From Macrostomum lignano (Eukaryota): a DNA stretch of 64,000 nt. Made by a program: the position numbers and the translations under genes. The notes beneath the pieces were generated by a model. It made no database searches. It worked only from the letters and a program-made list of their open reading frames with translations, and was not told where the DNA came from. Numbering within the stretch: the first letter of the stretch is position 1; each line of letters opens with the position of its first letter. Below, piece by piece: positions 2,218 through 53,547 of the stretch. The stretch is taken from NCBI GenBank assembly GCA_002269645.1, contig NIVC01000292.1, forward strand, positions 434,001 through 498,000, given 5' to 3'.

Positions 2218-3337
2218 TCAGCACAGGGCGTTGATCTCGGCCAGCTGAGCAGCCGTGAGCTGTCCAGCCGCCACGCCCCAGCAGATGAAGAAGCCGCGCA
2301 TGTTCTTGTCAGTGTTGAGGCTCGATGTGCCAAGGCGGAGACGGTCGTTCCAATCGCTGGTGAAATTGTAGTTAAAGTCGCTGTGGTAGCCATTGAAGAA
2401 GGTGCCGTTGAAGAAAAGCTGGTTAAAGCTGCTGCCATTAAAAGTGGCTGCAGTGAACACAGGCTCCGTGTCTGTCACTGTGAGCAGGTTGAACTCGTAG
2501 CTTCTCTTTTGCACTCTGTTGTCCGCAAACTGGGCTTCGATTGAGAGTTTCGTGAAATTGACATTGTCGCTGCTGCGGTATTCGTTCCAATGCCCGCCCG
2601 ACACGAAACTGCTCAGTGCCGTGAACTCCTGGATGTAAACGTATTTCTGGCCAGGCTGCCAGTAGCGCAGGTACTTGGCAAAGTAGGTGAACTGGGAGCC
2701 GTAGGTCAGGTGCTTGGTCAGGTTGCCGGACTCCGTGTCGATCTGCAAAAAATGGACAGTTTTGTACAAAGTCAAAATATGCTTATTGCGAGCCACCTTA
2801 TTATCGACCCACCTCGATGAAGGAGTCGGCGTGGCCGCTCAGCCAGACGCCGCGGTCGGTGAGCCTGGCCCCGGAGCCCAGGCTGGCAGCGAAGGACCGG
2901 TTGCCGGCCAGGTTCGGCAGGCCCAGCAGGAAGTTGTGAAACACCAGCAGCGCGGCCAGCGTCGTCTGCGACAGCGCGGCAACAGCGAAGCCTCCCGCCA
3001 AGCGTCCGGCGTTGACGACGGAGCGGCAGGTGTCGGAGCTGCGCCAGGTCGCGGCGAAGGCGGCCGCGTCGGCGAGTCGGCAGGCGGCCTCGGCCGGCGA
3101 GTGGGCCGCCGCGGCGCAGTTGGCTCGGGCGGCGCACTCGACGGCGCAGGAGCGCTCGGACTGCAGCCCAGTCAAGTTGGCCGGGGCGTTGGACGGCGGA
3201 CAGACTCGGACACCGCGAAAGGCGGCGCTCGTATTGGTGATGCTGGCCTCGGCGACGGCGACCAGCTGCGGACAGAGGAGAAGCGGCAGGTGGAGGAGCA
3301 GCAGCTGCAGCTGGGTGAATGGCTGGGCTCTGGCCAT
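2218..3337 (-). CDS. Secreted protein, 349 aa: signal peptide, PAN/Apple-like domain, LamG/concanavalin-A-like domain; exons 3337-2813 and 2742-2218
   Basis: The ATG at 3337 gives a hydrophobic leader, MARAQPFTQLQLLLLHLPLLLCPQLVAVAEA. A PAN-like motif follows: SERSCAVECAARANCAAAAHSPAEAACRL. A 70-bp phase-0 GT-AG intron (2812-2743) joins SFIE|IDTESG. The C-terminus RLRLG...MRGFFICWGV...QLTAAQLAEI fits the LamG-like pattern LG...F.G.i....L+..ei. Domain names come from motif recognition only. Confidence 0.7.
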
Positions 3338-4937
3338 GGCGTTGCTGGGAGCAGTCGGGCAGGTGGCTTTGCAGAGAGTCTGGGAGCAGTCGGGCAGGTG
3401 GCGCCGCTTCTCCCAGCGCTCCGCCGCTTTCATGAGCCGGGGGAGGGGGGCGCCAAGAGGCGAGGGGAGGCCGCCATCCCCTAGAGACCGGCCGGCATTG
3501 GCTGCTGTCTGTAGAAAGTAGGAGAGGAGAATTGGATTGACAGAAACAGCTCACGTCAGACATGTTTGCAGTTTGTCTGAAACCAAAACCCCACAGAGAA
3601 TCCACTCGCAATTTCCGTTCTCGCATCCGCAAATTTTCTAGCTGTCTTATTTTTTCATTATTCCGCTGAGTTTGAGGTGGTAAATTTTCTGTCACTTCCG
3701 GCCTGCTGTCTTGCAACCATCTGCAATGCTCTGCATTTTCATCGACCCCATGCGGTGGCCGTTCCGCGTTGCTTGCCGATTGCTGGACTTCTTTTGCTTG
3801 ATTTGTCGTCCACACAGGCTATGAAGAACGCTTGACTGCACTGCATCTCTAGCTGAGTGAGAAGTGCTTGCTGAGGATCTGTGGGACTTTTTTCAACAGA
3901 AAGCAGGAGCATTGATTGAGTATTGACTTACCGGCATTAACTTATAATACTATAAGTAGTGTTATTAATAACTTCGTCTCAGAAGCTTTTAAAAGAAAAG
4001 TCAAAGGCAAGGTTCGGATTTCCAAGAAAAAAAAAGTATAACTATTTAATTTTGTTGAATGTTTAACTGCCGTAACAGCCTCACTTTGCACAATTTTTCA
4101 CTTTCTTCTTGGCTTTTGCCATTCAATAATCACAATTTTAAAGCTCTAATTTCCCTCTAGTTTACGAGACAAAAAGTTATACTTTACAAAATGGTTCTGG
4201 TTCTAGAACCAGAACAAGCAATATGTAGAGCCTCCTTCAATTCCAAGCTATGAATACAAATGAACTGCATTATCATACGAGAGTGAGTCATACATGTACG
4301 ACCACAGATACTAAAATTCAGGCCTATATACTTAGTGAAACAGCTTTCTACTTTCAGTTCAGTAGCAATGAAGACTACACAAGCTATTTCATAAAAATAA
4401 TGGCAGCTGAAATGACTTTGATAAATTTAAAAGCCCAAGCTTGCAGGCGTAAACAAACTTTTAGTGGTCCTTGAAACAAACTTGCTAATTGGTTCAGCAG
4501 TAATGTACATTAGCCAGTCCCCTGCAATGTATATGGCAGCTTTAGGCTGGAATTCGGAGAAGAGCAAAAAAAATTGGGGCGGGGCGGGGGTAGTGTGAAA
4601 AGGCGCGGTTGGAGGGGTTTAACCATTTGGAAGCCAAAGGCCTGCACTGCAGGCCATACCGAAACGGCTCAAAAACCCAGAGATTGAAAAATGTCTATGG
4701 CATGAAAAACCATCTCCCAGTCACTAAAGCAAGTGCCCAGTATGGCCTGCTGTGCAGGTCATGATTAATTTAAAGAAGCCCTGCATTATGCATTTCCGTT
4801 ATGTTTTCACTCAAATGTTAAATGTGAAATAAGCGTGCACAGTGAAAACATGAGGTGATGCACAAATTTATGGTCGTATTAAATTTTAATCTCCTCACTA
4901 CTGACCTACGAGTATTAGTATTAGTATTAGTATACTA

Positions 4938-7765
4938 CAAGCTGTTGAAACCCGCGGAATTTGAACCGGGGAATTCCAATCCCCGGAACTATTTTTGCAT
5001 GTATTCTGAAATCTGAGCCCATCTGAAACAAAAACTTGTTAATAGTTAGTTAGTAGGATAAAGGTAAACAAAAATGGAGTACATTCGCATACAATTAGGA
5101 TGTGAGGCAAACATATTGTTGGCTAGGGGTGCTTTTACTTTAAATAGGCAATTAATGTCTGTCTGACTCTAAAACATGTATTGGCAAACTCTGGCCTCTG
5201 CCTCTGACTCTCCCTACGTCCCTTGGATCCTTTGAAACTTCTATCTTCTCTTCTGTTTCCTCTCTTCTCTCTCGTCCCTTGTCTCTTTTCTCCTCTCTTC
5301 TCTTTTTACTCTCTCCTCTCTCCCCTCTTCTCTCGTCTCTTCCCTCATTTCTCTTCTTTTTCATCTCTCTTATCTCATCTCTTTTCTTTTTCCTCTCCTC
5401 GCACTCTTCTCTTATATTTTCCTTCGCCTCTCTTCTCTCGTCTTTATTTGCTCTCTGATCTCTCCTTTCTCTTCTCTCTCTTCTCTTTTATCTCTTTTCA
5501 TTTCTCTCTGCTTCCCCTCTCTCTCTGCTTCCCCCTCTCTCTGCTTCCCCCCTCTCTCTCTGCTTCCCCCTCTCTCTCTGCTTCCCCCTCTCTCTGCTTC
5601 CCCCTCTCTCTCTCTGCTTCCCCCTCTCTCTGCTTCCCCCTCTCTCTCTGCTTCCCCCCTCTCTCTCTGCTTCCCCCTCTCTCTGCTTCCCCCCTCTCTC
5701 TCTCTGCTTCCCCCTCTCTCTGCTTCCCCCTCTCTCTCTGCTTCCCCCTCTCTCTGCTTCCCCCCTCTCTCTCTCTGCTTCCCCCCTCTCTCTGCTTCCC
5801 CCCTCTCTCTCTGCTTCCCCCCTCTCTCTCTGCTTCCCCCTCTCTCTCTGCTTCCCCCCCTCTCTCTCTGCTTCCCCCCTCTATCTTATCTCTCCTCTCC
5901 CATCTTTCTTCTCCTCTCTACTCTCTCCCCTCCATTCTCCTTTTTTCTCTCCTCTCGCCTAACTTACTTCTCTCTCCCTTTGTCTCTCCTCTCGTCTCTG
6001 TAATCTCTACGCTCCCATCTCTCGTCTGTTCATTTTCGTCTCTGCTCTCAGCTCATCCCCCCTCTTTCATCTGTCATCTTTACTGTCTTATATGTTCTCT
6101 CATTCTGTCCTCTCTGTACTCTTTTCTTTCACCTCTTTTGTCTCCTCACCTTCCTTTCTCCTTTCTCCTCTTCTCTTCCCTCTTCTATATACTCTCTCCC
6201 TCTCTTGTCTCGTCTCTTCTCTCTCCACTCTCCTCCTTTATCTCTCATCTCTCATTTCTCATCTCTCCTTTTTCCTCTTTACTAACTCCTCTCTGCTCTT
6301 CTCTCTGCTCTCCTCTCATCTGCAGCTCTCTGCTCTCTCCTCTCTACTCGCTCCTCTACTCACTCCTCTACTCTCTCTCTACTCGCTCCTCTACTCTCTC
6401 CTCTCTACTCGCTCCTCTCTATTCTCTCCTCTCATTGTCCTCGCTCCCTCATCTCTCCTATTATCTTTTATCTTTTCTCTTATTCTCTCTCTCACCTCTC
6501 CTCTCTTTTCGAATCGTCTATTCCTTCTTCTCTCCACTCTCAACTGCCCCTCAGCCATAAGCTGGATTCTTTTCTGGCCTTTGAGGTAAAAGTCTGCCCA
6601 TTCCTGCTTGGAAAGCCAGTTTGTGGGACGTAGTACTCTCATGGCTGTTCTCATGCTTTGATCATGTCATCTTTCTTGCCAATTTGCAAGCCCTGAAAGA
6701 AATTTGTGTATCTTCAGCTCCACTGCAGTCTGCATCAGTCTAACAACCAAGGAAATACGCATTTCTTAGGAGGACATTTAACTTTTAAAGTACCTTTAAG
6801 AGAAACCTAAAATTTCCATGATGTGACTAATTTAGTAGAGTTGTATTGCATTGCATCGCCTTTTCATAAATCTTTCGCTTTTACAAACCATGCTGGATTA
6901 CCCTGATTTGCCATCCACTACGTTAAACTGCTGCAGAGTTTGCCTATACAGAGGACAGTGGTTAGAATTTCTCACTAAAATGTTATGGATGGCTAAACGT
7001 AGCCTCTCAACGGGGGTGCAGAGAAGGCCATAAACAAAGCTATTCCAAAACACTGTACATTTTCTATGTACATTCAGTCCTATCGCCTGACCCTTCGTCT
7101 GGCTCTGGGGAATGAGTGAGTGAGTGGCACAAACAACAGAAAAAGCAGACAAACTTCACATGCTTACAGTTTCTTTTTCGGTTGAGTTACAGAGTTGAAA
7201 CTTTACATTTAGATAGAGAATGAGTTAATAAAGAATTGTGTCAAGTTTGAAGTCAATCGCTTTACGTGGAGCAAACTTATGGCAGCTGAAAATTAGTCAA
7301 TTTTGAAACCCTTTTACACATCTGGGCCCAGATCGGTATCGGAAAGAGAGGCAGGCGGGCGGAGGTTGGGGTGGTTGCTACGCTGAAAAAAACAGCCTAA
7401 CTTTAAAAGTGCACAGCACTGCTCAGGATTAACTTTGAAACTCGAAATTTTACACGATTGTGCCAAAATAGTTGAAAATTGTCTGTGTCAAATTTGAAGA
7501 GAATCGGTAGAAGTGGAGCGGCGCTATGGAGGATTTAGTGAAAAAATCGCGCATTTTGAGCAGTTTTTTGCACTTTTAGGTAGGAAGACTCAAATTTAGG
7601 AAATTTTAAGGTAGCCTAAGACATTCTCCGTAGTAAGTTTAGGGTGGGTGTAAAGTTTGGTGTAATTTGGTTGAGCGGTTTGGGAGTCCATAGCGATCAA
7701 AATTGTCCACACACAGACAGACACACACACAGACACACACACAGAGTTTTGATTTTTAGGTCGTA
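4938..7765 (-). mobile_element. Helitron-like family 1, unit 1 (2,828 bp, A-type)
   Basis: Starts CAAGCTGTTGAAACCCGCGG on +. CT-rich body about 5240-6550, then a conserved ~1.2-kb core ending in ACAG/AC repeats and TTTTGATTTTTAGGTCGTA. Confidence 0.8.
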
Positions 7766-8203
7766 CAAGCTGTTGAAACCCGCGGATTTTGAACCCGGGG
7801 AATTCCAATACCCGGAACTACTTTTGCATGTATTCTGAAATCTAAGGCCATCTCTCTCGTCCCTCGTCTCTCCTCTCTCCTCTCTCCCCTCTTCTCTCGT
7901 ATCTTCCCTCATCTCTCTTCTCTTCATTCTCTCTTATCTCATCTCTTGTCTCTTCTTTTCTCTCTCCTCTCCTCTCTCCTCTTCTCTCTCCTCTCTCCTC
8001 TCACCCCGTCTTCTCTCTGATCTTCATTCTCCTTTCTATTCTTTTCTCTCTTCTCTTAACTCTCTCCTCTACTCTCTACTCTCTCCTCTCTTCTCTCGTC
8101 TCTTCCCTCACCTCTTTTCTCTCTCGTTTTTGCTCTCTCATCTTTCCTTTCTCTTCTTTTATCTTTTCTCTCTTATCTCTTCTCATTTCTCTCTGCTCCC
8201 CCT

Positions 8204-8279
<76 letters not shown>

Positions 8280-8308
8280 ATCTCTTCTCATTTCTCTCTG
8301 CTCCCCCT

Positions 8309-8399
<91 letters not shown>

Positions 8400-10300
8400 T
8401 ATCTCCCCTCCTCTCTCTACTCTCTCCCCTCTCCATTCTCCTCTTTCCTCTCCTCTCTTCTCACTCACTTCTCTACCTTTGTCTCTCCTCTCTCCTCTCG
8501 TCTCTGTAACCTCTCCTCTGTTCTCTCTACTCTCCCATCTTTTATCTGTTCACTCTCGTCTCTGCTCTCTCATCCCCTCTTTAATCTGGCATCTCTGTCT
8601 TATATATTCTCTCACCTCTCTCCTCTGTACTCTTTTCTTTCCCCTCTTTTGACTCCTCACTTTCCTTTCTCCTTTCTTCTTTTTTCTTCTCTTCCCTTTT
8701 CTATACTCTGTCTCCCTCTCTTCTCTCACTCCACTCTCCTCTCTCCGTTATCTCTCATCTCTCATTTCTCATCTCTCCTTCCACTTCTCTCATCTCTAAA
8801 ACCTTAGAGATGTAGAGATGTATCTTTATCTCTTCTCTCTTCCCTTTACTCTCTCATCTCTTCTTTCACCTGTTTCCTCTCTGCTGTCTCCTCTCTCCTC
8901 TCATCTGCAGCTCTCTGCTCTCTCATCTCTCATCTCTCCTCTCGCTTTTCCTCTCTCCCCTCTTCTCCCCTCTCTCTCATCGTCCTCACCCCCTTATCTC
9001 TCCTATTATCTTTTATCTTTTCTTTTATCCGCTCTGTCGCCTCTCCTCTCTTCGAATCGTCTATTCGTTCTTCTTTCCACTTTCATCTGCCCCTCAGCTA
9101 TGAGCTGGATTCTTTATCTGGCCTTTGAGGTAAAAGTATGCCCATCCCTGCTTGGAAAGCCAGTTTGTGGGATGTAGTACTCTCATGGTTGTTCTCATGC
9201 TTTGATCACGTCATCTTTCTTGCCAATTTGCAGCCCTGAAAGGAATTTGTGTATCTTCAGCTCCACTGCAGTCTTCATCGGTCTAACAACCAAGGAAATA
9301 CGCATTTCTTAGGAGGCCATTTAAATTTTAAAGTACCTTTAAGAGAAAACCTAAATTTCCATGGTGTGTCTAATTTAGTAGGGTTGTATTGCATTGCATC
9401 GCTTTTTCATAAATCTTTCGCTTTTACAAACCATGCTGAATTACCTTGATTTGCCATTGCCATCCACTGTTAAACTGCTGCAGAGTTTGCCTATACAGAG
9501 GGCAGTGGTTAGAATTTCTCACTAAACTGTTATGGCTAAACGTAGCCTCTCCACTCTCGGGGTGCAGAGAAGGCTATAAATAAAGTTATTCTAAAACACT
9601 GTACATTTGCTATGTACATTCAGTCCTATCGCCGGACCCTTCGTCTTCATGGGGAATGAGTGAGTGAGTGGCACAAACAACAGAAAAAGCAGACAAACTT
9701 TACATGCTTACAGTTTCTGTTCTGATTGAGTAAGAGAGTTGAAACTTTACATTTAGACAGAGAATGAATCAAAGAAGAATTGTGTTAAGTTAGAAGTCAA
9801 TCGCTTCACGTGGAGCAAACTTATGGCAGCCGAAAGTTAGTCATTTTAAAACCCATTTACACCCTTTGCCCAGATAGGGAAAGAGGCAGGCGGGCGGAGG
9901 TTGGGGTGGCTGTCTCGCTGAAAAAAAACAGCCAAAATTTAAAAGTGCACAGCGCCGTTCAGGATTAACTTTGAGACTCGAAATTTTACACGATTGTGTC
10001 AAAATAGTTGAAAATTGATTGTGTCAAATTTGAAGAGGATCGGTAGAAGTGGAGCGGCGCTAAGGAGGCTTTAGTAAAAAAATCGCGCATTTTGAGCAGT
10101 TTTTTGCACTTTTAGGTAGGAAGACTCAAATTTAGGAAATTTAAAGGTAGCCTAAGACATTCTCCGTAGTGAGTTTAGGGTGGGTGTAAAATTTGGTGTC
10201 ATTTGGTTGAGCGGTTTGGGAGTCCATAGCGATCAAAATTGTCCACACACAGACAGACAGACAGACAGACAGACAGAGTTTTGATTTTTATAGTTAGAGA
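7766..10300 (-). mobile_element. Helitron-like family 1, unit 2 (2,535 bp)
   Basis: Same termini and core as unit 1; CT-rich body about 7850-9080. Confidence 0.8.
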
Positions 10301-12225
10301 CGAGGCCAACTCCTCCGATGGAGGAGAAAGGGGAAGAACTCCCATCACCGGAATTCCATTCCCTGAAATCCATCAGCTGAAATTCCATGACTTGAATCCC
10401 ATCTTCCAAATCATCTCCAAATCCTCTGTAAAGCCTTTCAAATACCATATCTTGTTTTCCCTGTTCGCAAAAACTGACTGCCATTGTCCAGACTCAGATT
10501 CTTCTGTCTCCTCTCTTCTCTTTTCTCTCCTCTCACGTCTCTCATCTCTACCACCTTATTTATCTCTTCTCCCTCGTCTTTCGTCTTTCTCTCCTGTCTC
10601 CTTTATCCCCTGTTTTCTCCTCTCTCCTCTCTTCTCTCCTCTCTCATCTCTCATCCCTCATGCCTCATCTCACTATTTCTTTCTCCTCTACTCTCAGCTC
10701 CTCTCTTCTCTCTCCTCTCATCTCTCCTGTCTCCCTCTGCTATCTCATATCTTCCCTCTCATCTCCTCTCTCCTCTTTTCTTCTCTCTCCCTCTTCGTTC
10801 CCGCCTTACTCCCCTCTTCTCTCCCATCTGTCATGTCTAATCTGTCCTCTCTCATCTCTACTCTCTTTTCTATAATCTCTTCTCTCTTCTCTTTTCACTC
10901 TTCTCTTTACCCTCTTTACTGACTGACTGAAGATACCAAATCCATAAAAATCCCTTCGTGAAACAGAAATCCTCTCCGCGAAACAGAAATCCTCTCCGCG
11001 AAACAGAAATCCTCTCCGCGAAACAGAAACCCTCTCCGTGAAACTGGACTCCTTTCGAAATCCAATCCGCGAAACAGAAATCCTCTCCGTGAAACTGGGC
11101 TCCATGGAAATCCTCTGAGTGAAACTGACATCCATCAAAATCGTCTCCGTAAAACAGAAATACATCTAGATTCTCTCCACGAAAAAGAAATCCTCTCCGT
11201 GAAACCGAAAACCATCAGAATACTCCGTGAAACTGGACTCAATCGAAATTTTCTCTGTCAAAAAGAACTTAACTCTCAGAATTCATTGGTTAGGGTTAGG
11301 GTTAGAGCTGCATAGAGCTGCGTGTTGAATTAATTGAATCAATTAATTGCGCAAACCATTTCTCAGTCAGACAGTATCAGTCTTATTTAAAGTTAAATAA
11401 ACGGTTGCGCAATCTAAATCAACCCTCCAATACGCAGCGGCAGACCCCCTTCCAATACGCCCAACTTTATCTATTACGTCTCGCAAAACTGAGTACAATT
11501 TTTGCAGAAAGTTAAAAGTATGGAAATAGTTTTTTAAATGCGGTGCTTTCTCTTTTCATATTTAAAGCATACAACTTATATCCCCGAACTCAGCGCTGCA
11601 AGATCTTTCCAGCAATATAAGTCTCTCCTCTCAAAGTTTAAAACTCGAGGAACAGTTAGCGTTTGAAATTTACCGATTTCCCGACTGCTTGCTAGAGAAG
11701 CTCGCAAGTTTATTCATTGAATTTCACTGCCAAACTAATACACAGGGCTGCCAATAATAAAACCAAATGAATCTCGACACAGTCTATCTATTTACACTGT
11801 ACAACTGCTATGTACACTCAGCCCAAGCCCAACCCCCGTTCTGGGGGAAGCATTAAATTTAATTCAACCCCCAATACGCGGGGGGTTTATTTGCATTGAA
11901 CCCAGAACACGCGCACCCACCACCCCTCAATACACAGCGGCCCGCGGGCGGAGGTTGGGGTGGCTATTTTTACAAACTGGCTGCAGCCCCAGGCAGAGTG
12001 GCCAAAGAAGGTTATTGGGGGTTAAAAAAGCAGATTTATGCTTTTTTAGGGATGTTAAAATGTGAAAATTAAAAATTAAAATAGCCTAAAGCCTGCTCCG
12101 GAAAATTTGCAGTTTTCCCATATAAGTTTCGACGCTGACTTACCAGAATTCTAGGAGTTCACTTGCAACATACAGACAGACAGACAGACAGACAAACATC
12201 GCGTCGGTTTTAGTATTAGGGGAGA
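10301..12225 (-). mobile_element. Second, distinct Helitron-like non-autonomous element (family 2) embedded in the array
   Basis: The minus-strand 3' end is CTCG, preceded by a perfect hairpin CTCCTCC-GAT-GGAGGAG (10310-10326). The minus-strand 5' end is TCTCCCC, with (GTCT)n at about 12175-12193 and AAAATAGCCTAAAGCCTGCTCCGG similar to the family 1/Lep1 end. It shares GGGCGGAGGTTGGGGTGGCT (about 11946) with family 1, but the interior differs. Confidence 0.65.
10960..11240. repeat. 20-bp tandem repeat GAAACAGAAATCCTCTCCG(C/T) inside the family 2 element
   Basis: Four near-perfect copies at 10960-11039, then degenerate copies. Confidence 0.9.
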
Positions 12226-12235
12226 TATGTAGAGA

Positions 12236-13056
12236 CAAGCTGTTGAAACCCGCGGATTTTGAACCCGGGGAATTCTAACACCCGGAACTACTTTTGCATG
12301 TATTCTGAAATCTAAGGCCATTCACAAACAAAAACTTGTTAATAGTTAGTAGGATAGAGGTAGACATAAAATGGAGCACATTCGTGTAAAATTAGGGTTT
12401 GAGACATTGTTGGCTGGGGTACTGCACAGAATGTCAGGCAATGTCTGTCTGACTCAAAAACATATATTGCTAAACTCTGCTCTCTCCCTGACTCTCCCTA
12501 CGTCCCTTGGATCCTTTAAAATTTCTATCATCTCCTTGTTTCCTCTCATCTCTCTCGTCCCTCGTCTCTCCTCTCTCCTCTCTCCCTCTTCTCTCGTATC
12601 TTCCCTCATCTCTCTTCTCTTTCATCTCTCTTATCTCATCTCTTGTCTCTTCTTTTCTCTCTCCTCTCCTCTCTCCTCTCCGCTCTCCTCTTTCCCCCTC
12701 TCCTCTCTCCTCTCACCCCCTCTTCTCTCTTATCTTCCTTCTCCTTTCTATTCTTTTCTCTCTTCTCTTAACTCTCTTCTCTACTCTCTCATCTCTCCTC
12801 TCTACTCTTTCCTATCTCTCTCCTCTCTCCCCTCTTTTCTCGTCTCTTCTCTCACCTCTTTCCTCTCTCTTTCCTCTCATCTCTTTTCTTGTTTTATCTC
12901 TTCTCTCTCCCCTCATCGCTCGTCTCTTCCCTCACCTTTCTTCTCTCTCGTCTGCGTTTTCATCTCTCCTTTCTCTTCTTTTATCTTTTCTCTCTTATCT
13001 TTTCTCATTTCTCTCTGCTCTGCTCTGCTCTCTCTCTCTCTCTCTCTCTCTCCCTC

Positions 13057-13133
<77 letters not shown>

Positions 13134-16311: not shown

Positions 16312-16376
<65 letters not shown>

Positions 16377-19300: not shown

Positions 19301-19564
19301 ATCTGTGTCAAATTTGAAGAGAATCGGTAAAAGTGGAGCGGCGCTATGGAGGATTAAGTGAAAAAATCGCGCATTTTGAGCAGTTTTTTGTACTTTTAGG
19401 TAGGAAGACTTAAGTCTAGGAAATTAAAAGGTAGCCTAAGACATTCTCCGTAGTAAGTTTAGGGTGGGTGTAAAGTTTGGTGTAATTTGGTTGAGCGGTT
19501 TGGGAGTCCATAGCGATCAAAATTGTCCACACACAGACAGAGTTTTGACTTTTATAGGTAGAGA
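15453..19564 (-). mobile_element. Helitron-like family 1, unit 4 (4,112 bp, A-type with internal partial duplication)
   Basis: Junction at 15452/15453. The block CAGAATGCCAGGCAATGTCTGTCTGACTC recurs internally at about 17000. Confidence 0.8.
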
Positions 19565-22676
<3,112 letters not shown>

Positions 22677-23564: not shown

Positions 23565-23633
<69 letters not shown>

Positions 23634-24434: not shown

Positions 24435-24495
<61 letters not shown>

Positions 24496-31378: not shown

Positions 31379-31450
31379 TGCGACTACGTATAACAATATA
31401 CGTATTATATGCGACTACGTATAACAATATACGTATTATATGCGACTACG
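31379..31450. repeat. 31-bp tandem repeat (2.3 copies) with internal palindrome TACGTATA-ACAA-TATACGTA
   Basis: TGCGACTACGTATAACAATATACGTATTATA starts at 31379, 31410 and 31441. Confidence 0.9.
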
Positions 31451-36770: not shown

Positions 36771-36789
36771 GATCAACACCAGCGACGGA

Positions 36790-43642: not shown

Positions 43643-43789
43643 CCCCACAACACCGCAAGGGTGCTGCGTCTCCTGCGCCGTACGTGCAGTGCCATAGACA
43701 GAACCGCATTTTCTCACGCCCAAATTTTCCCGACAGTTTTTTTTACCGCCGAGGTTTGGCTGCCTAGGTTATGCGGAACTATTAATACT

Positions 43790-44244
43790 AATCACCGGAA
43801 CTATTTTTGAATGCATTCTTAAATCTGAAGCCATATTCAAACAAAAAACTTTTTAATAGTTAGGATGGAGGTAACCAAAAAATTGGAGTAAATTCGCGTT
43901 AAATTAAGATTTGAGGCCTTTGAAACTTCTCTCCCCTTCTCGTATTTAACAATCTTCTCTTCTGTCTCCTCTCTTCTCTCTTCTCTTTCCTCTCTCCTTC
44001 CTTTCTTTTCTCGTCTCATCTATCACCTTATCTCGTGTCTCTACTCTCTCATCTCTCGTATCTCTCCTCTCCTCTCTGCTCTTCCATCCCTTCTCTCTCC
44101 TTTATTTTTCTTTATCTACTCTCCTTTTTTCTCTCCTCTTATGTTCTCTCTCATCTAATCTTTGACCTCTTCTCTCTCCTCTATTCCTACTCCTTTCTTC
44201 CCTCATCTGGCCCGCAGCCATGATCTCTTATCTGGCCCTCGAGG
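43790..44244 (-). mobile_element. Old, truncated solo copy of Helitron-like family 1
   Basis: AATCACCGGAACTATTTTTGAATGCATTCTTAAATCTG and AAACAAAAAACTTTTTAATAGTTAGGAT align to the array unit start. A short CT body follows, then CTCATCTGGCCCGCAGCCATG...TTATCTGGCCCTCGAGG, matching the body/core boundary. Confidence 0.8.
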
Positions 44245-44520: not shown

Positions 44521-44800
44521 TGGTTGATCTCGGCCAGCTGAGCAGCCTTGAGCTGTCCAGCCGGGCGTGTAAAAGTTGCTGCTCTTCGCCTTCGCACTGC
44601 TGGCAGCAAATTTAGTGCTGATAAATGGAGGAGAGTTCCTGTTGCCGCTGGTGCTGCGAAACTCCTCCCACTGTCTGCAGACAGCCGCTCCGGAGTTCTT
44701 GGATATAAACCATAGTCTAGCCCGGGTGATGACGCAATGCTTGAGAGACTAGCTGAAGATGTCCGTCAGTTGTGGTTTTCCACTGTCGAGGCTCCATCAG
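44521..44800 (-). pseudogene. Decayed paralog of the LamG-like exon of the 2218-3337 gene
   Basis: GTTGATCTCGGCCAGCTGAGCAGCC-TGAGCTGTCCAGCCG is near-identical to 2230-2270. Translation ALRHHPG*TMVYIQEL aligns to YLRYWQPGQKYVYIQEF, and QWEEFRST...ISTKFAASSAKAKSSNF aligns to HWNEYRSS...IEAQFADNRVQKRSYEF. It carries a stop, a frameshift and an internal deletion, and its 3' end is cut by the SINE. Confidence 0.8.
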
Positions 44801-46454: not shown

Positions 46455-49400
46455 ATGCCACTCGTCAATAGAAAGCAGCCGTCAACAGCTGCGTCCAAGC
46501 CGGGGCAGACTCTGAACTCTAAAATATGGTTTGAACAGTTTAAGATGCTGCTTCTGCTGCTGCTGAAGCTCAAGGCAGCGCGCTTTGCTACAGTTTTTAT
46601 ACCCATAGCATTGGTAGCCTCCAGTCTTTATATAGTGCCTCTCCTTGGCGACATCAAATCGGAAACAGGAAAAAACGGCAGCGATCAGCGTGTCTTCTAC
46701 AGCGCCTCCGACTTTTCAGCATCGAAGGCCAAAGTTCTGGTTGACCGCTCCAGCTTCCCGGCTGAAACAGCAGCCGCGATCAGCATCATGAAAGCTGGAG
46801 GTGGCGATGCTAATTGGATTGAGGAGTGCGGGCCAGAGGCCGACTGCAGAGAGCGGTTCATCAATCTCGGAGGACACGAAGCCATTGTTGCCCTGATCCG
46901 CTACTCAAAAAAACCAGACGAATCGCGAGCTGTATTGGAATGTCTCCACCTTCATGGAGCCAAAGTCGATATCAGATGCGCTTTTCTGTACAAGGTGATG
47001 GTTCTGTCTGTCCAGGCAACCTTGGGGTTCGTGAATTTCAAAGAGATACAAATGTTTCAACTTTTTGAAAAATATTCAAACAATAGCGATCAGGTAGAGC
47101 GCTATGACAACGAAAAGACGAAATCCTTGCCAAACTCGGTTTGTGCCAATGGGGTTAAAAAAGATACATTTAGCCAATTGACGTCAATGTTTGTACGCAT
47201 CTCAGTCAGCCTGTCAGCGATCGGAGTGAACTTCTACCTGCTCGTCTCCACTGTATCCTGCATCCGCATGATCAAGACCGATGGCTTCCTGCAGCAGCTG
47301 TTTCGCAGCGGCCTGTCCGTGTCTGCCTATTGGCTGGTAATTTGGCTCGTCACTGCGCTCGAGTGCCTCTTTTTCGCGGGCGTTTTCACAGCATCGAACG
47401 CGCTGGAGTGTTTGGGAGTTTTTCCAGCCTCAGCCATGGCTCGAGTCTTCATCTTCTTCGCACTGTTTTGCCTCAACCTGGCTGCCTTCATGCTGCTGCT
47501 GGAGCTGCTGCTGCCACCTCTGGCACTCGTGTCCATGATGACCATAGTGATGAGCATCGGACTTCTGGTAGCAAGTTTCAACAGTACTTTTCTTCAAGAA
47601 CAAGCGAAATTCTTATTGTACATTTTTTCGCCACTGTTCGCCACCGAGTACATCATCAAGCTGTTCAACTCTGAGGTGAGGCGACAGTTCTCAGTAGCTG
47701 AGCTGAAGCATGAAGACGACTCTGAGCGACTCTCCCAGATTCTGACCTGGACAGCGATTGGGCTGCTGCTGTTTGCTCTGTTGCTGACTTATCTGGACTT
47801 CATGCTGAGCAGCGGCAATGGTCTTTGTCTACCACCGCACTACCCGTTCATGCCCGACTTCTGGTGCCCGAAAGGCCACAAGGACCGCAGCGACTCCGCT
47901 CCGAGCCAAGGCCCAGCAGAAAAGACCGAACTGAACATCGAACCCGTGATGGGGCTGCAACCCGTTGTCCTTGTGAAGGATGTCAGCAAGAAATATCAGA
48001 GCTGCTGTTTTTTCCTTTCAGACGGTCCAACTGTGCTAAAGAGACTGTCCTGTAAGCTGTTTCTCTGGCTCTGCCGTTGCCTAAAATCCAATTTTCCATG
48101 ACATACGCTCGTACTGCAAATTGAAAGTACCCAGGAGCTCCTGACATCTTAGAGCTGAGATAGTAGAACTGAGATGGAAGAGCTGAGATAGTAGAGCTGA
48201 GAACTTGGAGCTGAGATGATAGAGCTGATTCAGAATTAATTGTCAAGTACTACGAGGGGAGAAAAAACAATCAGTGCAAATCTTTCTATCGTAAAATTGT
48301 TTAATTGTCATTATCAAGATACCAGTGCACAGTGCAAAAAATTAAAATTATCAGTAACTGGCCAATCGCTATTAGTGGGGCGGGGGTTGTTTGCCGGCGC
48401 CCCTGTGTTTGGGGTGGGTCTTGTCGTGTATGGGGGAATAAATCGAAGCCTTTGAAGGGTGTGGATTTCGGTAGGGGGGGCTTTTTGGCTTGCTGTTCTC
48501 TCCTTCGCTTGGCTGGCGCTGCCTGATACAGCTAGCTATAAGTGATTTCCGCTCATTTCAAAATCAAATGCAGGCACGATTTACCGAGGCCAGATCACGG
48601 CTCTCATCGGACACAACGGCGCTGGCAAGTCGACGCTCATCAAGATCCTCACAGGCGAGGAGCTGCCAGACGAGGGAACGGCCCACATCGGCGGCTGTCT
48701 AGTGACGAACCCGCTGCTCCGTCTGTCGCTCAGAGGTCGGATCAGCACCTGTCCGCAGTTCGACGTCCTCTGCGACTCGCTCACTGTGATGGAGTGCATC
48801 CGAGTCACTCTGGTCAGCAGGGCGGCCAGCGACACCAGCCAGCTTGAGAGAGCTCGCGGAATGCTGCAGAGACTCGGTCTCGGAGACAAGGAGGATGTGC
48901 TGTCTTGCGACCTGAGCGGCGGTCAGAAGAGAAAGGTGAGCACGATCCTGGCTCTGCTGGGCGACCCGGACGTTGTGTTTCTCGACGAGCCAACGAGCGG
49001 ACTGGACCCGGTGTCGAGGCGGCAGCTGTGGCAGCTGCTGCAGGAGGAGAAAAGCGCCCGCTCCATCATCCTGTGCACGCAGTTCATGGACGAGGCGGAC
49101 ATCCTGGCGGACCGCAAGATCTTCCTGTGCGGCGGCAAGATCGTGTGCGCTGGGTCTTCGATGTTTCTGAAGCGAGCGTTCGGCTGCAGCTTCACGCTGA
49201 ATGTGTCGCTGAAGTCCAAGTCAGGCGCGGAGTCGCTGCTGGCCAAGCTGAAGCAGGTCCATGTCAAAAGCCTTGATGAAACCGAACTGCAGCTGGAGGT
49301 TCCCGCATTGAACTCGTCTGTTTTGACCGAGGCAGTTCAGGTTCTGGAGAACAGCAGAGAAGTCGAGACGTTCGGTCTGTCTCAGGCTTCTCTCGATGAC

Positions 49401-52400
49401 ATTTTCATGAGGCTGGGCGGGATGGATTCTGAAGACGTTGTTCGGGCATTTCAAGCGGGCACTCTGACGCTTTCCCAGCTTTCCCAGAAAAAATACTTAC
49501 CGGTTGAGACTCCCGTTAAGACGGAAGCTTCAAAGCCGTGGCTGATAAATTCTAACAAAGCAAAAACTTCTGCCCTGGTCCAGTTTGTCGCCTTGTTCAT
49601 TGTGAACATGAAGCGGCAGGTGCGGGATCCGTTCAATCTTGTGGGCAGAATTCTTGTGCCCGCCGCCCTGCTCGTAGCGATAGCTGTTGGCTCTGCTCGG
49701 TCAATAGATTTCGTGACGGAGAAGACAAATGCCTCAGCACAAAACCAGATGGATATTCTGGCCGTCCCTCAATCCATGCGACTCAGTTTTTTTGGAATGC
49801 AGGAGATTCCCATTGCGTGCGTTTCCGACGGAGACGCAAATCCCGTGTCCGTGGACGAGTGCAGGCGACTCGCTCTTCCAGAAGCGACTGGAAAGAAAGC
49901 ACCTAGTGCACCAATCCTTATCAAAAAGTCTCCATCTCAAAGCTTAGAGCAATTTCTGTCGCTGAAGTCAACCAAGGACAAGCTCTACGGCGAGTTGAAG
50001 GCGAAACAGGTCAAATATACGAGTATGAGAGAATTGATGCCATGCGCTGTGTATTACGCTTCGCCGTGGTTAAAAAGTGTAGCCAACACCGACCGATATG
50101 TGGGCGTTGGAATATTTTTTGGAGAAGAATTTTACTTACCTACAGCGCATGTTCACAAAAGAGCTCTTGTTCAATTGCTAATGTATTTCGGAATTCCGGG
50201 ACCGGAAGCAACCACCGCATTAGCGCTCATAGATAAATTTGACCATGCTTGGGTCAGTCTAGGATTTGAGTTGCGACTGTTTCTCCTACTAATGCCTTTG
50301 TTTGCAATCTCCTGCTTGAGCGATCCGATCGAAGACATGAGCAGCCGAGTGCGCAGCTACCTCGTAGCAACTGGCATGACGCACATGGCCTACTGGGTCA
50401 ACACATTTGTCACGCACTGGGTCCAGTACGCCATTTGCTACGTGATTGCTGTCGGGCTGCTAATGATGTCTCAGGCATACAACAGTGCTTACCTCGTACT
50501 AATCGCCTTCTTGCCGGCGTTTATTTTTGGAACCGTGTCCAACCTGCTGACTGTCTACGCCATCGCTGTACTCACAAGGAAAAGGAGCACCCTGGTCTCC
50601 ACAGGCTGCGTCCTGGTCTCTGTCCTTTTGCCCTCATTTGTAGTTATGTTTCAAAATTTTCCGGTTTATTTGAAACTACTCATTTGGATAGTTCCCACCA
50701 TGGCTCCCATTACCCTAATGTACTTCAGCACTGAGCATTTTTTATATAAGCTTGCCTACTATCAAATCATAGACGGCTCTGAGCTGCCTGGCATGATTGA
50801 CAGTCTGTGGACGAATTCCGGCATCTTCCACTCTCTCATAGCGATGCCGGTGCACATCATTATCTTGCTGGGCATCATTTTTGCCGTGGAAGAAAGCGCC
50901 GAAATCAAAGAGGCCGTGTGCCACCGCGGAGCCCAGACCAAGCCTGACAAGCTCGATAGCGACATGGAAGACGGCGCAAAGAAAGAAGCAGAGCGGGTGC
51001 TGGCGGCTCCCAGGAGCTCCAAGAACGTGCTGGAGGTTCGACAGCTGCAAAAGATTTATCCGAACGGAGTCAACGCTGTGCGAGGCGTCACCTTCGGAGC
51101 GATGGCCGGCGAGATCTTTGGTCTGCTGGGCGCGAATGGAGCCGGCAAGTCCACCTCTATGTCGGTGATTGTCGGCGAGGAGGCCGCGACGGAGGGCGTC
51201 TGCGAGGTCCGCGTGCAGGATGGTGCCTGGTTGTCTGGTCGGGAGGGATCCACAGTCGGCGCCATCGGCTACTGCCCGCAGTACAACCCGCTGTTCAACT
51301 GCATCACCGTGGCCGAGCACATCCGCTTCTACGCGGACATCCGCGGTCTGGACTCGATCGAGGCCGAGCGACAGACGATCCGGCTGATGCAGAGCCTCGG
51401 CCTGTCGCAGCACAGCGACAAGCAGGCCGGCCAGCTGTCGGGCGGCAACAAGCGGCGTCTCTGCCTCGCCATCGCTCTGCTGGGCGACCCGGCACTCATC
51501 GTCATCGACGAGGCCTCGACTGGCGTAGATCCCGAGAACAAGCGCTTCATCTGGGGCGCCATCCGTTACATGACAAAAAATAAAAGAGTTGTCATGGTCA
51601 CGACGCACAGCATGGAGGAGGTCGAGGCTCTGTGCAGTCGGGTCGGCATCATGAACAAGGGCAGGATGATCTCAGTGGGCACCGTGCAGCAGCTTTTGAG
51701 TCGGTAAGTTTGCATTACAAAAATTACATTCTCGCGAAAAAAGATAGCTTAGCGAGGTGTCTTAGTCTCATCAATGGTCCAGTCGCCTTAGGTCAGCATC
51801 TAGGATTTTGTACCTGGTTGCTACGATCTACAAGATTAGAATTTTGAGAGCTTTTAGTTATAGCGTTCCGGGGGCTCGTATATTTCTTGTGCGTTGCTAG
51901 ATCTTTAAGCTTACTGCGTAGTGTACAGTGTCGTTTATGGTTGATGGGGAAGGAACGATGGGAAAAATACAGCAACCATTAAGCTTATAGTAACTGCTAC
52001 AACTACCTCCCTCCAAAGGGAAGGTAAATTAAGGAGGGATCATAAGCAGGTGGTGCCTTTTGGAATGTGAAGAAAACAGGCATGTGCGCAGCAGATCGAC
52101 ATGTAGTTCAATCAAAAGTGCTAACTAAACTACTAAATAATGTGGAGCTCGCATCAGTTCACGTTTCTTCACGGAGGTAAATTGCGTGTCGTTATATGCA
52201 TACTGGCTTCGGTAGGGAGATGTCAAAATACTTATAGGAAGTCGGCTCCAGCGGTGGTGGCTTTTGGCATGCGGCAGTGTTGAGCGGGTTAATCACGAAA
52301 TGGTGAAGAACTTGAGTCTGGTGGCACAAAAACGGAAACATGAACTGACAGATCGCGCGGCGCGTCGTCAGCGATCTGTGTTTAGCTGGAAGGCTGAGGA

Positions 52401-53547
52401 TGTGCGAGGTGGTGCAGTCCCAAATCCAATCCATCTGGAACGAGTTCGTGTCGAATTGTTGGACACGCTCGTATTAGCAGCTCCGAGACATCGTAGAAGA
52501 GTCAGCTGTAGGCTTTGAGCTGACGTTTAGTCGCCGAAGAATTGGCAGCTAGCTACTCGATCTGCACTTGTGGCCAGTCCTAGTTGAATTTGACTGGCTG
52601 GTTAAACCGTCTAGCTAGACTGTTGACAGTGCAAAATCGTGTTGTGCCGATGGTGCGTGATGCCACGCAAACCATATCAGAGCACGAGGCTCTGGCCCAC
52701 GCTCTGCTACGTCAGCAGAGGCTAATTGTGCTCCCAGTTTGGAGCTGCAGCAGCTGGTGGACACTGCGTACTCTGCGATGCTGGGCTCTGCGTTGGGGCG
52801 TGCGCTGCGGCCCGGGCTCGGAGTCCAACGTCGCTAGGGCCTAATGCGGCCTTCTGAGCTGCGCGAGAGGTGACTCAGGATGGCTGGCCACGTCATCCGG
52901 TCGGAAAGTCGCTGCCTCGAGCCGCTACACGACTAGCTTTTGTGGACGGCGCAGGGTCCGCGGAGACGAGGACGACGGCGAACGATGCGCTACCCCGACA
53001 GCTGCTCCTGAGGGATGCGAGAGCTCCCGTTCGGACTCTGACTAGGGGCGCTGACTTTTTGAGAAGGACCGCCCTAAAGGTGTTTGACATCTCCCCTCCT
53101 GTGTCCACTCGTGGCCGGCGAGAGGTGTATTTTTGTTGCTGTTTTTGTTGCTATTGCAGGCAATGGGGCATTTTTATTGACACCCGCAGCTATGGAGACG
53201 CGTACACGCTGGAGCTGCTGCTGGCCCCGGAGACCGAGCCAGTAGTCAGACAGAAAAAGCTGATCATCAAGAAAGTGGTGTCGGAGCAGTTCAAAGGAGC
53301 GCAGACGCAGGAGGACCTCGGCATCGGCCTGGTCATGCAGTTCTCGCTGCCCAAGTCGTCAGTGCGCAGCCTGTCGGGTGCACTGAGGTGGATCTCAGTC
53401 CTTCAGAGCCGTCTAGGCGTGAGCTACTGGGCCCTCTACCAGATATCGCTGGATCAGGTGTTCGTGAAGCTGGTGAAGATGTTCGACCGTCCGGTCCCGA
53501 AGCCTGCAGGAAGAAGTCAAGAATACTTCAGAAGAAGACATCCTTAA
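46455..53547 (+). CDS. Full-length ABCA-family lipid transporter copy C (ABCA5/6-like), 1,694 aa; exons 46455-48051, 48574-51703, 53190-53547
   Basis: 1597+3130+358 = 5085 nt, spliced in frame through GT-AG introns. Architecture TMD1/ECD1-NBD1-TMD2/ECD2-NBD2. NBD1: TIYRGQITALIGHNGAGKST, LSGGQKRK, FLDEPTSGLD, CTQFMDEADILADRK. NBD2: GANGAGKST, LSGGNKRR, IDEASTGVD, TTHSMEE, GTVQQLLSRYG. Confidence 0.92.
48150..48232. repeat. Short degenerate ~14-bp tandem repeat (AGAGCTGAGATAGT) in intron 1 of copy C
   Basis: About six imperfect AG(A/C)CTGAGAT units. Confidence 0.7.
52260..52400 (+). mobile_element. Possible LTR-retrotransposon integrase fragment
   Basis: GSVERVNHEMVKNL resembles the integrase G.vER.N motif; very short. 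Confidence 0.3.
52580..53080 (+). mobile_element. Decayed 3' fragment of an RTE-clade LINE in intron 2 of copy C
   Basis: Frameshifted translation ELQQLVDTAYSAML...RER*LRMAGHVIRSE...LLWTAQGPRRRGRRRTMRYPD matches the RTE ORF2 C-terminal pattern Y.RML...R.LR.AGH..R...LLW...G.R.RG. Confidence 0.55.

What the first reader, a model, noticed from the sequence alone, without database searches (positions are those of the whole stretch)
2218..53547. Duplicated head-to-head LamG-ABCA module with reciprocal gene loss
With the 24-kb piggyBac removed, the PAN-LamG gene (-) starts about 1.85 kb upstream of ABCA copy A (+), divergently. The LamG relic (-, 44521-44800) lies about 1.65 kb upstream of ABCA copy C (+) in the same arrangement. 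In module 1 the LamG gene is intact and the ABCA is dead; in module 2 the LamG is dead and the ABCA is intact. This points to an ancestral secreted-lectin plus lipid-exporter pair, possibly co-regulated or functionally coupled, resolved by complementary loss.
Basis: inference. Interest (0 to 1): 0.7.

Follow-up and report, generated by a model that had tools for sequence, protein, structure and literature searches.

The report
ABCA gene cluster with co-duplicated lectin fragment
In a flatworm (Macrostomum lignano) a cluster of four lipid-transporter (ABCA) gene copies sits next to one secreted lectin-like gene, and a short decayed piece of that gene lies beside another transporter copy; this looks like ordinary local gene duplication and decay, not a functional gene pair.

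Summary
The window is Macrostomum lignano DNA (contig NIVC01000292.1). The coordinates in the finding are right.

What holds up:
- 2218-3337(-) is an intact, annotated two-exon gene. It encodes a 349-aa secreted PAN/Apple + ConA/LamG-like protein of a family found only in M. lignano.
- ABCA copy A is a pseudogene: three frameshifts, and NBD1 (its first ATP-binding domain) is deleted.
- Copy C reads through as a 1694-aa ABCA transporter.
- The 24.3 kb between the LamG gene and A is inserted DNA: a 2.5-kb piggyBac carrying a nested 21.8-kb CT-rich repeat array. Removing it puts the two genes about 1.6 kb apart.

What is weaker than stated:
- The "relic" is real but small. It is a 41-nt island (40/41 identical) plus about 170 nt of weak colinear similarity to exon 2. 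There is no trace of exon 1, and the family protein profile does not detect it.
- The locus is a four-copy ABCA cluster (A dead, B disabled, C and D open), not two modules.
- The DNA upstream of A and C shows no detectable homology apart from the relic.
- Four other loci holding LamG-family paralogs have no ABCA gene within 10 kb. One other ABCA paralog locus has no LamG.

Verdict: part of a neighbouring gene was copied along when the ABCA cluster expanded, and redundant copies then decayed. Functional coupling is unsupported. Low interest.

The parts
2218..3337 (-). Intact gene for a 349-aa secreted PAN/Apple + ConA/LamG-like protein. Exon 1 is 3337-2813, the intron 2812-2743, exon 2 2742-2218.
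   Evidence: Sequence and splice sites. 100% match to A0A1I8HH30 and PAA86160.1, including the exon junction. Family alignment A1. Pfam on family members. AF2 model and Foldseek.
4427..28733 (-). Composite piggyBac insertion of 24.3 kb, bounded by TTAA at 4427-4430 and 28730-28733. Terminal inverted repeat AAGCCCAA... (19/22 with one gap). The element is about 2.55 kb without its nested array.
   Evidence: An 8-nt perfect inverted run next to TTAA has p~1e-3 over the 56 TTAA pairs tested. No empty site was available to confirm the ends.
26829..28592 (-). piggyBac transposase ORF, 587 aa, uninterrupted.
   Evidence: Pfam DDE_Tnp_1_7 E=8.4e-65 and zf-Tnp_2 E=6e-7.
4936..26696 (+). Nested 21.76-kb array of about 8 direct copies of a 2.5-4 kb unit. 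Each unit has a CT-rich half and a mixed half ending in (ACAG)n. The array is flanked by the 15-nt direct repeat ATTAGTATTAGTATA.
   Evidence: Composition skew, tandem repeats, self-blastn, junction sequences.
29246..34799 (+). ABCA copy A, a pseudogene with three frame changes and NBD1 deleted.
   Evidence: tblastn with the C model: frames 2/1 in exon 1, frames 2/1/3 further on; no match to C residues 536-813.
37966..43469 (-). ABCA copy B, the most divergent copy. Disabled by an 11-nt deletion and a TGG->TAG change in the TM7 (seventh transmembrane helix) region.
   Evidence: The subgenome copy B' (L003) is broken at other places.
43784..44216 (+). Isolated fragment of the same repeat unit that builds the 21.8-kb array. 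It lies 300 nt from the relic.
   Evidence: Self-blastn, 68-78% identity to 4972-5108, 12271-12403, 13954-14240 and other copies.
44523..44757 (-). Degraded fragment of LamG exon 2 (the 'relic'). It consists of the 41-nt island 44523-44563 (40/41) and a weak colinear match 44584-44757. About 210 nt are missing between the two parts. Reading frames are broken and no exon 1 is present.
   Evidence: The same state is found in subgenome copy L003.
46455..53547 (+). ABCA copy C, with open exons 46455-48051, 48574-51703 and 53190-53547, giving 1694 aa.
   Evidence: Pfam ABC2_membrane_3 and two ABC_tran stretches. Best solved-structure matches are ABCA4/1/7/3 at about 1e-92. The exon 1/2 junction type is confirmed by the transcript-based protein P0004 for B'.
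54019..58359 (-). Ty3/gypsy-like LTR retroelement inserted between C and D. Its ~131-nt LTRs are 96% identical.
   Evidence: LTR pair. Pfam on separate ORFs: gag/zinc knuckle/protease, RNase H, integrase.
58973..64000 (+). ABCA copy D, the closest relative of C. It is open as far as the window runs.

Best explanation
This is a birth-and-death cluster of four ABCA lipid-transporter paralogs in Macrostomum lignano. It lies next to a lineage-specific gene for a secreted PAN/Apple + ConA/LamG-like protein.

Inferred history:
- One of the old local duplications that built the cluster (at about the depth of the A-C split) copied the neighbouring LamG gene, or part of it, together with the ABCA gene.
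- The extra LamG copy then decayed to a roughly 235-nt remnant in the B-C spacer.
- ABCA copies A and B also decayed, while C and D stayed open.
- Gene conversion keeps the ATP-binding-domain (NBD) segments of all copies 93-96% alike. A short conversion-like event probably accounts for the 41-nt near-identical island in the relic.
- Later, a piggyBac with a nested 21.8-kb repeat array separated the LamG gene from copy A.

Shown: the gene states, the homologies, the insertion anatomy, and the lack of LamG-ABCA adjacency at other loci. Inferred: that LamG and ABCA were copied in one event, and that conversion made the island. The adjacency is a matter of neighbourhood; nothing indicates functional or regulatory coupling.
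For: - Organism and gene identity.
- Four ABCA copies with mosaic identity: transmembrane-domain (TMD) segments 68-82%; NBD1 93-95% among B, C and D; NBD2 94-96% among A, B, C and D.
- Fourfold-site identity in exon 1: C-D 76%, A-C 59%, B-C 39%.
- A is dead, B is disabled, C and D are open.
- The relic is significant against real-sequence controls, and is colinear and on the same strand. Its aligned-pair identity of 70%, which local alignment biases upward, fits the A-C neutral divergence.
- The relic is identical in state in the 98.1%-identical subgenome copy L003, so it predates the recent genome duplication (PMC10733133).
- LamG-family paralogs at L004-L007 have no ABCA within 10 kb. ABCA paralog locus L002 has no LamG.
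- Insertion anatomy.
Against: - No homology is detectable between the reconstituted A-upstream DNA (3338-4430 + 28735-29335) and the C-upstream DNA (44801-46454); the best tile reaches z=2.9. No exon-1 remnant is seen. A single duplication spanning gene, spacer and ABCA is therefore inferred, not demonstrated.
- The 40/41 island inside an otherwise ~70%-identical remnant is not explained by uniform neutral decay. Conversion across such poorly matching flanks would be unusual.
- Copy B, which branched off before the A-C split, lies between A and the relic. A simple tandem duplication of a LamG-A unit therefore does not give the present order without further rearrangement.
- Only five LamG-family loci and two other ABCA loci could be inspected.
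Confidence: 0.72

Rival explanations
1. An ancestral, co-regulated or functionally coupled head-to-head pair (a secreted lectin plus an ABCA lipid exporter) was duplicated as a module and resolved by complementary loss. The surviving LamG gene and the surviving ABCA copy C still work together.
For: The orientation is the same, and the inferred spacing is similar: about 1.6 kb for LamG-A after removing the insertion, and 1.65 kb for relic-C. LamG is intact beside dead A, and the relic lies beside intact C.
Against: None of the four other LamG-family paralog loci has ABCA nearby, and ABCA paralog L002 has a SAM-domain neighbour. The cluster has four ABCA copies, with D also open and B also dead, so there is no two-way complementarity. 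The surviving partners are now 43 kb apart and no shared upstream sequence is detectable. One copy of each duplicated gene being lost is the null expectation.
Confidence: 0.07
2. The relic did not arise with the ABCA duplication. It is an independent small ectopic copy of LamG exon-2 sequence, for example filler DNA from break repair, a TE-mediated capture next to the repeat fragment at 43784-44216, or a short conversion patch. It happened to land in the B-C spacer.
For: The 41-nt island has abrupt borders and 40/41 identity, while everything around it is at or below ~70%. There is no exon 1 and no flanking homology. A repeat fragment lies 300 nt away.
Against: The additional ~170-nt match is colinear and on the same strand, and it exceeds all 762 real-sequence controls. 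That points to an older and longer homologous tract than a 41-nt patch. Landing within 45 kb of the source gene, in the matching orientation beside an ABCA paralog, is more economically explained by local segmental duplication.
Confidence: 0.16
3. The relic is a chance or compositional match and the pattern is not real.
For: The family profile HMM gives no hit on the relic. tblastn E-values within the window are weak, 0.019 and 3.1.
Against: A 40/41-nt match cannot arise by chance in 64 kb (blastn E=1e-14). The island is conserved in the subgenome copy. The remainder of the relic scores z~6 against real-sequence controls.
Confidence: 0.03

Closest known systems
Tandem (birth-and-death) gene-family clusters with pseudogenes and concerted evolution, as described for many ABC transporter, olfactory-receptor and immune gene clusters
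   Same: Several paralogs lie in mixed orientation within 35 kb and some are pseudogenised. Conversion homogenises the conserved domain-coding segments (NBDs 93-96%) while other segments diverge (68-82%). TE insertions sit between copies, and a flanking gene was partly co-duplicated.
   Different: Nothing essential. The specifics are new: this cluster is in M. lignano, and the co-duplicated neighbour is a lineage-specific PAN-LamG gene.
ABCA subfamily full transporters (ABCA1/3/4/7)
   Same: TMD-NBD-TMD-NBD architecture, ABC2_membrane_3 and two ABC_tran domains, and Walker A motifs in both NBDs. The best solved-structure matches are ABCA4/1/7/3 at E~1e-92.
   Different: At 1694 aa it is the size of ABCA3, with a short first extracellular domain. 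Substrate and expression are unknown. The copies in this window are not in the transcript-based NCBI annotation, although their subgenome counterparts on L003 are.
PAN/Apple + Laminin_G_3 (concanavalin A-like lectin/glucanase superfamily) secreted proteins
   Same: Signal peptide, an invariant cysteine pattern in the N-terminal ~60-aa module, and a C-terminal beta-sandwich. Two of eight family members hit Laminin_G_3 and five of eight hit PAN_1. Foldseek matches ConA-like lectin domains.
   Different: The window protein itself is below Pfam thresholds. All detectable relatives are from M. lignano. No ligand is known.
piggyBac DNA transposons
   Same: A DDE_Tnp_1_7 transposase with a C-terminal zinc finger, TTAA at both candidate ends, short terminal inverted repeats, and a size of about 2.5 kb without the nested insert.
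   Different: It carries a nested 21.8-kb repeat array. Its termini begin AAGCCC rather than the classical CCC. No empty site was available to confirm the ends.

Membership tests
Laminin G / concanavalin A-like lectin domain (Pfam Laminin_G_3, clan CL0004) | Significant match of the protein to the family HMM | tested here: not met
   No Laminin_G family at E<=1 for the 349-aa window protein.
Laminin G / concanavalin A-like lectin domain (Pfam Laminin_G_3, clan CL0004) | Homologs that align over the full length match the family HMM | tested here: met
   Two of eight aligned family members hit Laminin_G_3, best E=4.2e-6. P0010 also carries a precomputed weak Laminin_G_3 hit.
Laminin G / concanavalin A-like lectin domain (Pfam Laminin_G_3, clan CL0004) | Beta-sandwich jelly-roll fold | tested here: met
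   The AF2 model built on alignment A1 has pLDDT 67.6 and pTM 0.62, with mainly beta strands in residues 130-335. Foldseek against the PDB gives 109 hits at E<=1e-3. The 50 best listed are largely lectin-like jelly-roll domains by my reading of the entry names (toxin receptor-binding N-subdomains, the sialidase lectin domain, a GH43 accessory domain, PAPP-A), with TM 0.35-0.43 and 10-16% identity. Model confidence is moderate.
PAN/Apple domain | HMM match above Pfam's gathering score | tested here: inconclusive
   PAN_1 E=0.0014, 18.9 bits against a cut-off of 21.4, for the window protein. Five of eight family members hit PAN_1, best 2.4e-4.
PAN/Apple domain | Conserved cysteine framework | tested here: met
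   C46, C64, C68, C74 and C86 are invariant in the 8-sequence alignment.
ABCA full transporter | Two TMD-NBD halves with ABC2-type membrane domains, and closest similarity to ABCA proteins | tested here: met
   Pfam ABC2_membrane_3 and two ABC_tran stretches on copy C. Walker A motifs GHNGAGKS and GANGAGKS are present. The best solved-structure matches are ABCA4/1/7/3 at ~1e-92, against <=1e-32 for the full-length transporters of other subfamilies (ABCB, ABCG).
piggyBac transposon | DDE_Tnp_1_7 transposase | tested here: met
   E=8.4e-65 over the full profile, plus zf-Tnp_2.
piggyBac transposon | TTAA target-site duplication flanking terminal inverted repeats | tested here: inconclusive
   TTAA|AAGCCCAA... 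at 4427 and ...TTGGGCTT|TTAA at 28733. The inverted match is 19/22 with a gap, and further subterminal inverted repeats are present. No second copy or empty site was available to fix the ends.
Conserved divergent (bidirectional-promoter) functional gene pair | The adjacency recurs for paralogs or orthologs | tested here: not met
   None of the four other LamG-family loci (L004-L007) has ABCA sequence within 10 kb. ABCA locus L002 has a SAM_1 gene upstream and no LamG.
Conserved divergent (bidirectional-promoter) functional gene pair | Co-expression of the two partners | not testable with these tools
   No expression data are at hand. The gene identifier was not found in the paper library.
Segmental duplication with pseudogenisation | Paralogous copies of both genes in colinear order and orientation | tested here: met
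   LamG(-)/A(+) and relic(-)/C(+). A-C homology runs throughout the coding DNA. The relic is homologous to exon 2.
Segmental duplication with pseudogenisation | Homology of the DNA between the two genes | tested here: not met
   Tiled local alignment of the reconstituted A-upstream DNA against the C-upstream DNA stays within the null range, maximum z=2.9. This is expected if the DNA is old and neutral, so it weakens the single-event claim without excluding it.

The most novel reading that the evidence does not exclude
The LamG-family gene and an ABCA exporter were an ancestral divergently transcribed, functionally coupled pair, for example a secreted lectin-like protein whose loading or secretion depends on lipid export. 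The 41-nt island in the otherwise decayed relic would then be kept by selection, for example as a source of antisense or small RNA against the LamG mRNA, rather than by accidental conversion.
Probability: 0.04. Interest if true: 0.5.

Novelty: new member of a known kind. Interest (0 to 1): 0.12.

Why it matters
It matters little beyond annotation. The window documents three things:
- An M. lignano ABCA cluster that is turning over through duplication, decay and domain-restricted gene conversion.
- A Macrostomum-restricted family of secreted PAN + LamG-like proteins.
- An endogenous piggyBac with an uninterrupted transposase ORF.

If the coupling idea were true, it would suggest a new lectin/lipid-exporter partnership. 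The available tests argue against it.

Tried and rejected
- Single-sequence AF2 of the LamG protein gave pLDDT 39 and was unusable. The 8-sequence alignment was needed.
- The word-indexed homolog search found only the protein itself. Repeating it with the family alignment added nothing new. The full HMMER scan was what found the family.
- The family-profile search of six-frame fragments did not detect the relic or any other LamG remnant in the window or loci.
- An apparent exon-2 hit in L002 (score 20) turned out to be a CAG-rich low-complexity match.
- An exact look-up of the transposase to find other element copies returned nothing on record.
I did not attempt it by other means, so the empty-site test for the piggyBac could not be done.
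- Rfam found no RNA family in the window.
- UniProt's name 'Fibrinogen C-terminal domain-containing' for the LamG protein is not backed by Pfam or by the fold search.
- The gene identifier Mlig021333 does not occur in the paper library.
Full report
**Source and overall layout.** The gene at 2218-3337(-) is 100% identical to Macrostomum lignano proteins A0A1I8HH30 and PAA86160.1 (BOX15_Mlig021333g1). These sit on contig NIVC01000292.1 of assembly GCA_002269645.1. The window holds, in order:
- the LamG-like gene (-);
- a 24.3-kb block of inserted DNA;
- four ABCA paralogs: A(+) 29246-34799, B(-) 43469-37966, C(+) 46455-53547 and D(+) 58973 to the window end;
- a gypsy-like LTR element (54019-58359) between C and D.

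Just left of the window lies a ubiquitin-conjugating-enzyme gene. There is no further ABCA copy within 10 kb on that side.

**The LamG-like gene.** It has two exons, 3337-2813 and 2742-2218, separated by a 70-nt GT..AG intron. The junction (...SFIE|IDTESG...) is the one in the annotated protein. The 349-aa product starts with a signal-peptide-like hydrophobic stretch.

Pfam gives only a sub-threshold PAN_1 hit (E=0.0014, 18.9 bits against 21.4) and no Laminin_G hit. A full HMMER scan of 1.84 billion representative proteins found 13 proteins at E<=1e-3; all eight with a named organism are from M. lignano, and the two others looked up carry only an archive identifier. Several are ~330-380 aa long and align end to end. 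Five cysteines in the N-terminal module are invariant, and the C-terminal motif (...L.aaE...l..LC) is conserved. Five of eight members hit PAN_1 and two of eight hit Laminin_G_3 (4e-6).

An AF2 model built on this alignment (pLDDT 67.6) is mainly beta-sandwich from residue ~130. Foldseek matches it mainly to concanavalin-A-like lectin jelly rolls, with TM 0.35-0.43 and 10-16% identity. The top-ranked hits are the lectin-like subdomain of bacterial neurotoxin receptor-binding regions. This is generic fold similarity and not evidence of toxin function. 'PAN + LamG-like secreted protein' is therefore a fair label, established at family and fold level rather than by a direct Pfam hit.

**The relic.** Within the window, the only strong match to the LamG gene is 41 nt at 40/41 identity: 2230-2270 against 44523-44563, on the same strand. 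It encodes AGQL(T/K)AAQLAEIN, 12 nt before the stop codon.

Beyond this island, a gapped local alignment joins 2501-2691 to 44584-44757, with 117 of 168 aligned pairs identical. Its score is 21.5. Controls give 10.7 +/- 1.5 for 500 shuffles, and 11.2 +/- 1.7 (maximum 17.5) for 762 real segments of the window on both strands.

The two matched blocks are colinear, with about 210 nt missing in the relic. They sit in different reading frames, and stop codons interrupt the frames. No exon-1 similarity exists in 44801-46454 (score 11.5, below the control mean of 15.4). The family profile HMM does not detect the relic in six-frame fragments. No other remnant was found elsewhere in the window, in L002 or in L003 apart from the L003 counterpart.

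The relic is therefore real but small, and it is recognisable only at the DNA level.

**ABCA copies.** Copy C reads through three exons with canonical splice sites (donor GTAAG at 48052, acceptor CAG at 48573, donor GTAAG at 51704, acceptor at 53189). It gives a 1694-aa protein with both Walker A motifs. The exon 1/2 junction type is confirmed by the transcript-based protein P0004 of the B homeolog. The best solved-structure relatives are ABCA4, ABCA1, ABCA7 and ABCA3 at ~1e-92.

Copy A changes frame near 30290, 32240 and 32655, and it lacks any counterpart of C residues 536-813 (NBD1). About 900 nt of unrelated sequence lies there instead. A is a pseudogene regardless of possible single-base assembly errors.

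Copy B carries an 11-nt deletion and a TGG->TAG change in the TM7 region, relative to its 98%-identical subgenome copy. That copy (B', L003) is itself broken elsewhere, for example by a frameshift right after Walker A. D is open up to the window edge.

Identity between copies is mosaic:

| Segment | Nucleotide identity between copies |
|---|---|
| TMD-coding DNA | 68-82% |
| NBD1 | 93-95% among B, C, D |
| NBD2 | 94-96% among A, B, C, D |

Gene conversion therefore homogenises the NBD segments, pseudogenes included. Fourfold-degenerate identity in exon 1 is 76% for C-D, 59% for A-C and 39% for B-C. The branching order is B first, then A, then C/D.

**The 24-kb insertion.** The transposase ORF (26829-28592, 587 aa) is uninterrupted and matches DDE_Tnp_1_7 at 8e-65. 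Of the 56 TTAA pairs flanking it, one pair (4427 and 28730) is followed inward by a perfect 8-nt inverted repeat, AAGCCCAA. This extends to 19/22 with one gap, and further subterminal inverted repeats are present.

Inside the element, 4936-26696 is an array of about eight direct copies of a 2.5-4-kb unit (70-86% identical). Each unit has a strongly CT-rich half and ends in (ACAG)n. The array is flanked by the 15-nt direct repeat ATTAGTATTAGTATA. Without the array the element is ~2.55 kb, a normal piggyBac size.

Removing 4431-28734 puts the LamG ATG ~1.6 kb from the first ATG of A, or ~1.7 kb from the ATG homologous to that of C. The relic lies 1.65 kb from C. I could not confirm the ends with an empty site.

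**Is there a duplicated module?** Three points favour it. The orientation and spacing of relic/C mirror LamG/A. The relic lies in the same cluster. Its divergence outside the island fits the neutral A-C divergence.

Two points argue against a clean single event. The reconstituted A-upstream DNA shows no homology to the C-upstream DNA (11 tiles, best z=2.9). And B, the earliest-branching copy, lies between A and the relic. I therefore regard co-duplication of LamG sequence with an ABCA copy as the most economical reading, but as inferred.

The relic may have stayed functional for a time. That would explain why coding similarity outlasted the similarity of the spacer.

Four other loci with LamG-family paralogs (P0005, P0017 and two copies of P0010; 10-kb flanks where the contig allows) have a PDZ gene, a retroelement, amino-acid permease genes or an MFS transporter as neighbours. 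tblastn with copy C finds no ABCA sequence in any of them. The other ABCA paralog of this subfamily (P0003, 58% identical; locus L002) has a SAM-domain gene 1.3 kb upstream and no LamG trace.

With four ABCA copies (two dead, two open) and one LamG gene plus one remnant, 'complementary loss' is simply the usual loss of redundant duplicates. Nothing points to co-regulation. The surviving LamG gene is now 25.9 kb from a dead ABCA and 43 kb from copy C.

**Subgenome copy.** L003 (NIVC01001810.1, first 15.5 kb) is 98.1% identical to window 38010-53217. This fits the ~2-2.5% divergence of the three subgenome copies reported for this assembly (PMC10733133). It carries the relic in the same state, island included, so the relic predates the recent genome duplication. 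C' on L003 has a 1-nt deletion in a T run in exon 1, which could be real decay or a long-read assembly error.

**Unexplained.** The 40/41 island has abrupt borders inside a remnant that is otherwise ~70% identical. All 13 codons, synonymous sites included, are conserved apart from one replacement. Conversion is active in this locus, so a short conversion tract is my preferred explanation. Such a tract would be unusual given the poor flanking homology. Selection on the DNA or RNA cannot be excluded.

**Verdict.** The structural inference is plausible. This is an ordinary birth-and-death ABCA cluster with a co-duplicated fragment of a neighbouring gene. Interest is low.

Noticed in passing
window 4936-26696: A 21.8-kb array of about 8 direct copies of a 2.5-4 kb unit. 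It is strongly strand-asymmetric (GC skew down to -0.79, CT-rich on the + strand). Each unit ends in (ACAG)n. The array is nested inside a piggyBac and flanked by the 15-nt direct repeat ATTAGTATTAGTATA. An isolated fragment of the unit lies at 43784-44216. The unit may be a non-autonomous retroelement that was amplified in tandem.
   Followed up: partly
window 26829-28592 (-): An endogenous piggyBac with an uninterrupted 587-aa transposase ORF (DDE_Tnp_1_7 plus a C-terminal zinc finger). The paper on piggyBac transgenesis in M. lignano (PMC8717057) does not use the word 'endogenous' in its main text. An active resident transposase could matter for the stability of such transgenes.
   Followed up: partly
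window 44523-44563 vs 2230-2270: A 41-nt island with 40/41 identity and abrupt borders, inside an otherwise ~70%-identical decayed remnant. It is identical in the subgenome copy L003 (8652-8692). Uniform neutral decay does not explain it.
   Followed up: partly
window 33354-34107, 38459-39212, 50955-51708, 63529-64000; and 40670-41590, 48556-49483, 61154-62084: The NBD-coding segments of the ABCA copies are 93-96% identical, pseudogenes A and B included. The TMD-coding segments are only 68-82% identical. Gene conversion appears confined to the ATP-binding domains.
   Followed up: partly
L003 (NIVC01001810.1 1-15462) vs window 38010-53217: A subgenome copy that is 98.1% identical but carries different lesions. 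Window B has an 11-nt deletion and TGG->TAG. L003 B' has a frameshift after Walker A and several more. L003 C' has a 1-nt deletion in a T run where window C is open. This may be differential decay between subgenomes, or partly assembly error.
   Followed up: partly
window 54019-58359 (-): A Ty3/gypsy-like LTR retroelement between C and D. Its ~131-nt LTRs are 96% identical. The gag/zinc-knuckle/protease (433 aa), RNase H (342 aa) and integrase (269 aa) ORFs lie in separate frames, the RT region between them is broken, and no clean target-site duplication was seen.
   Followed up: partly
window 2218-3337 and proteins P0005-P0013: A family of secreted ~340-aa PAN/Apple + LamG-like proteins whose named relatives, in a scan of 1.84 billion representative proteins, are all from M. 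lignano. UniProt names vary between members (Apple, Lectin_legB, VDE, Fibrinogen C-terminal) and are mostly not supported here.
   Followed up: partly
window 358-698; 34182-34373; 35012-35088; 31379-31450: Minor tandem repeats: 16/34-nt units at 358-698, a 47-nt unit x4.1 (97% matches) between A and B, (CAA)26, and a perfect 31-nt x2.3 repeat inside the stretch that replaces NBD1 in copy A.
   Followed up: no
window 29246-64000: None of the four ABCA copies of this window appeared as an annotated protein in the homolog search, whereas their counterparts on L003 are annotated (P0004 and a 1232-aa product). The annotation of this contig may be missing genes C and D.
   Followed up: no
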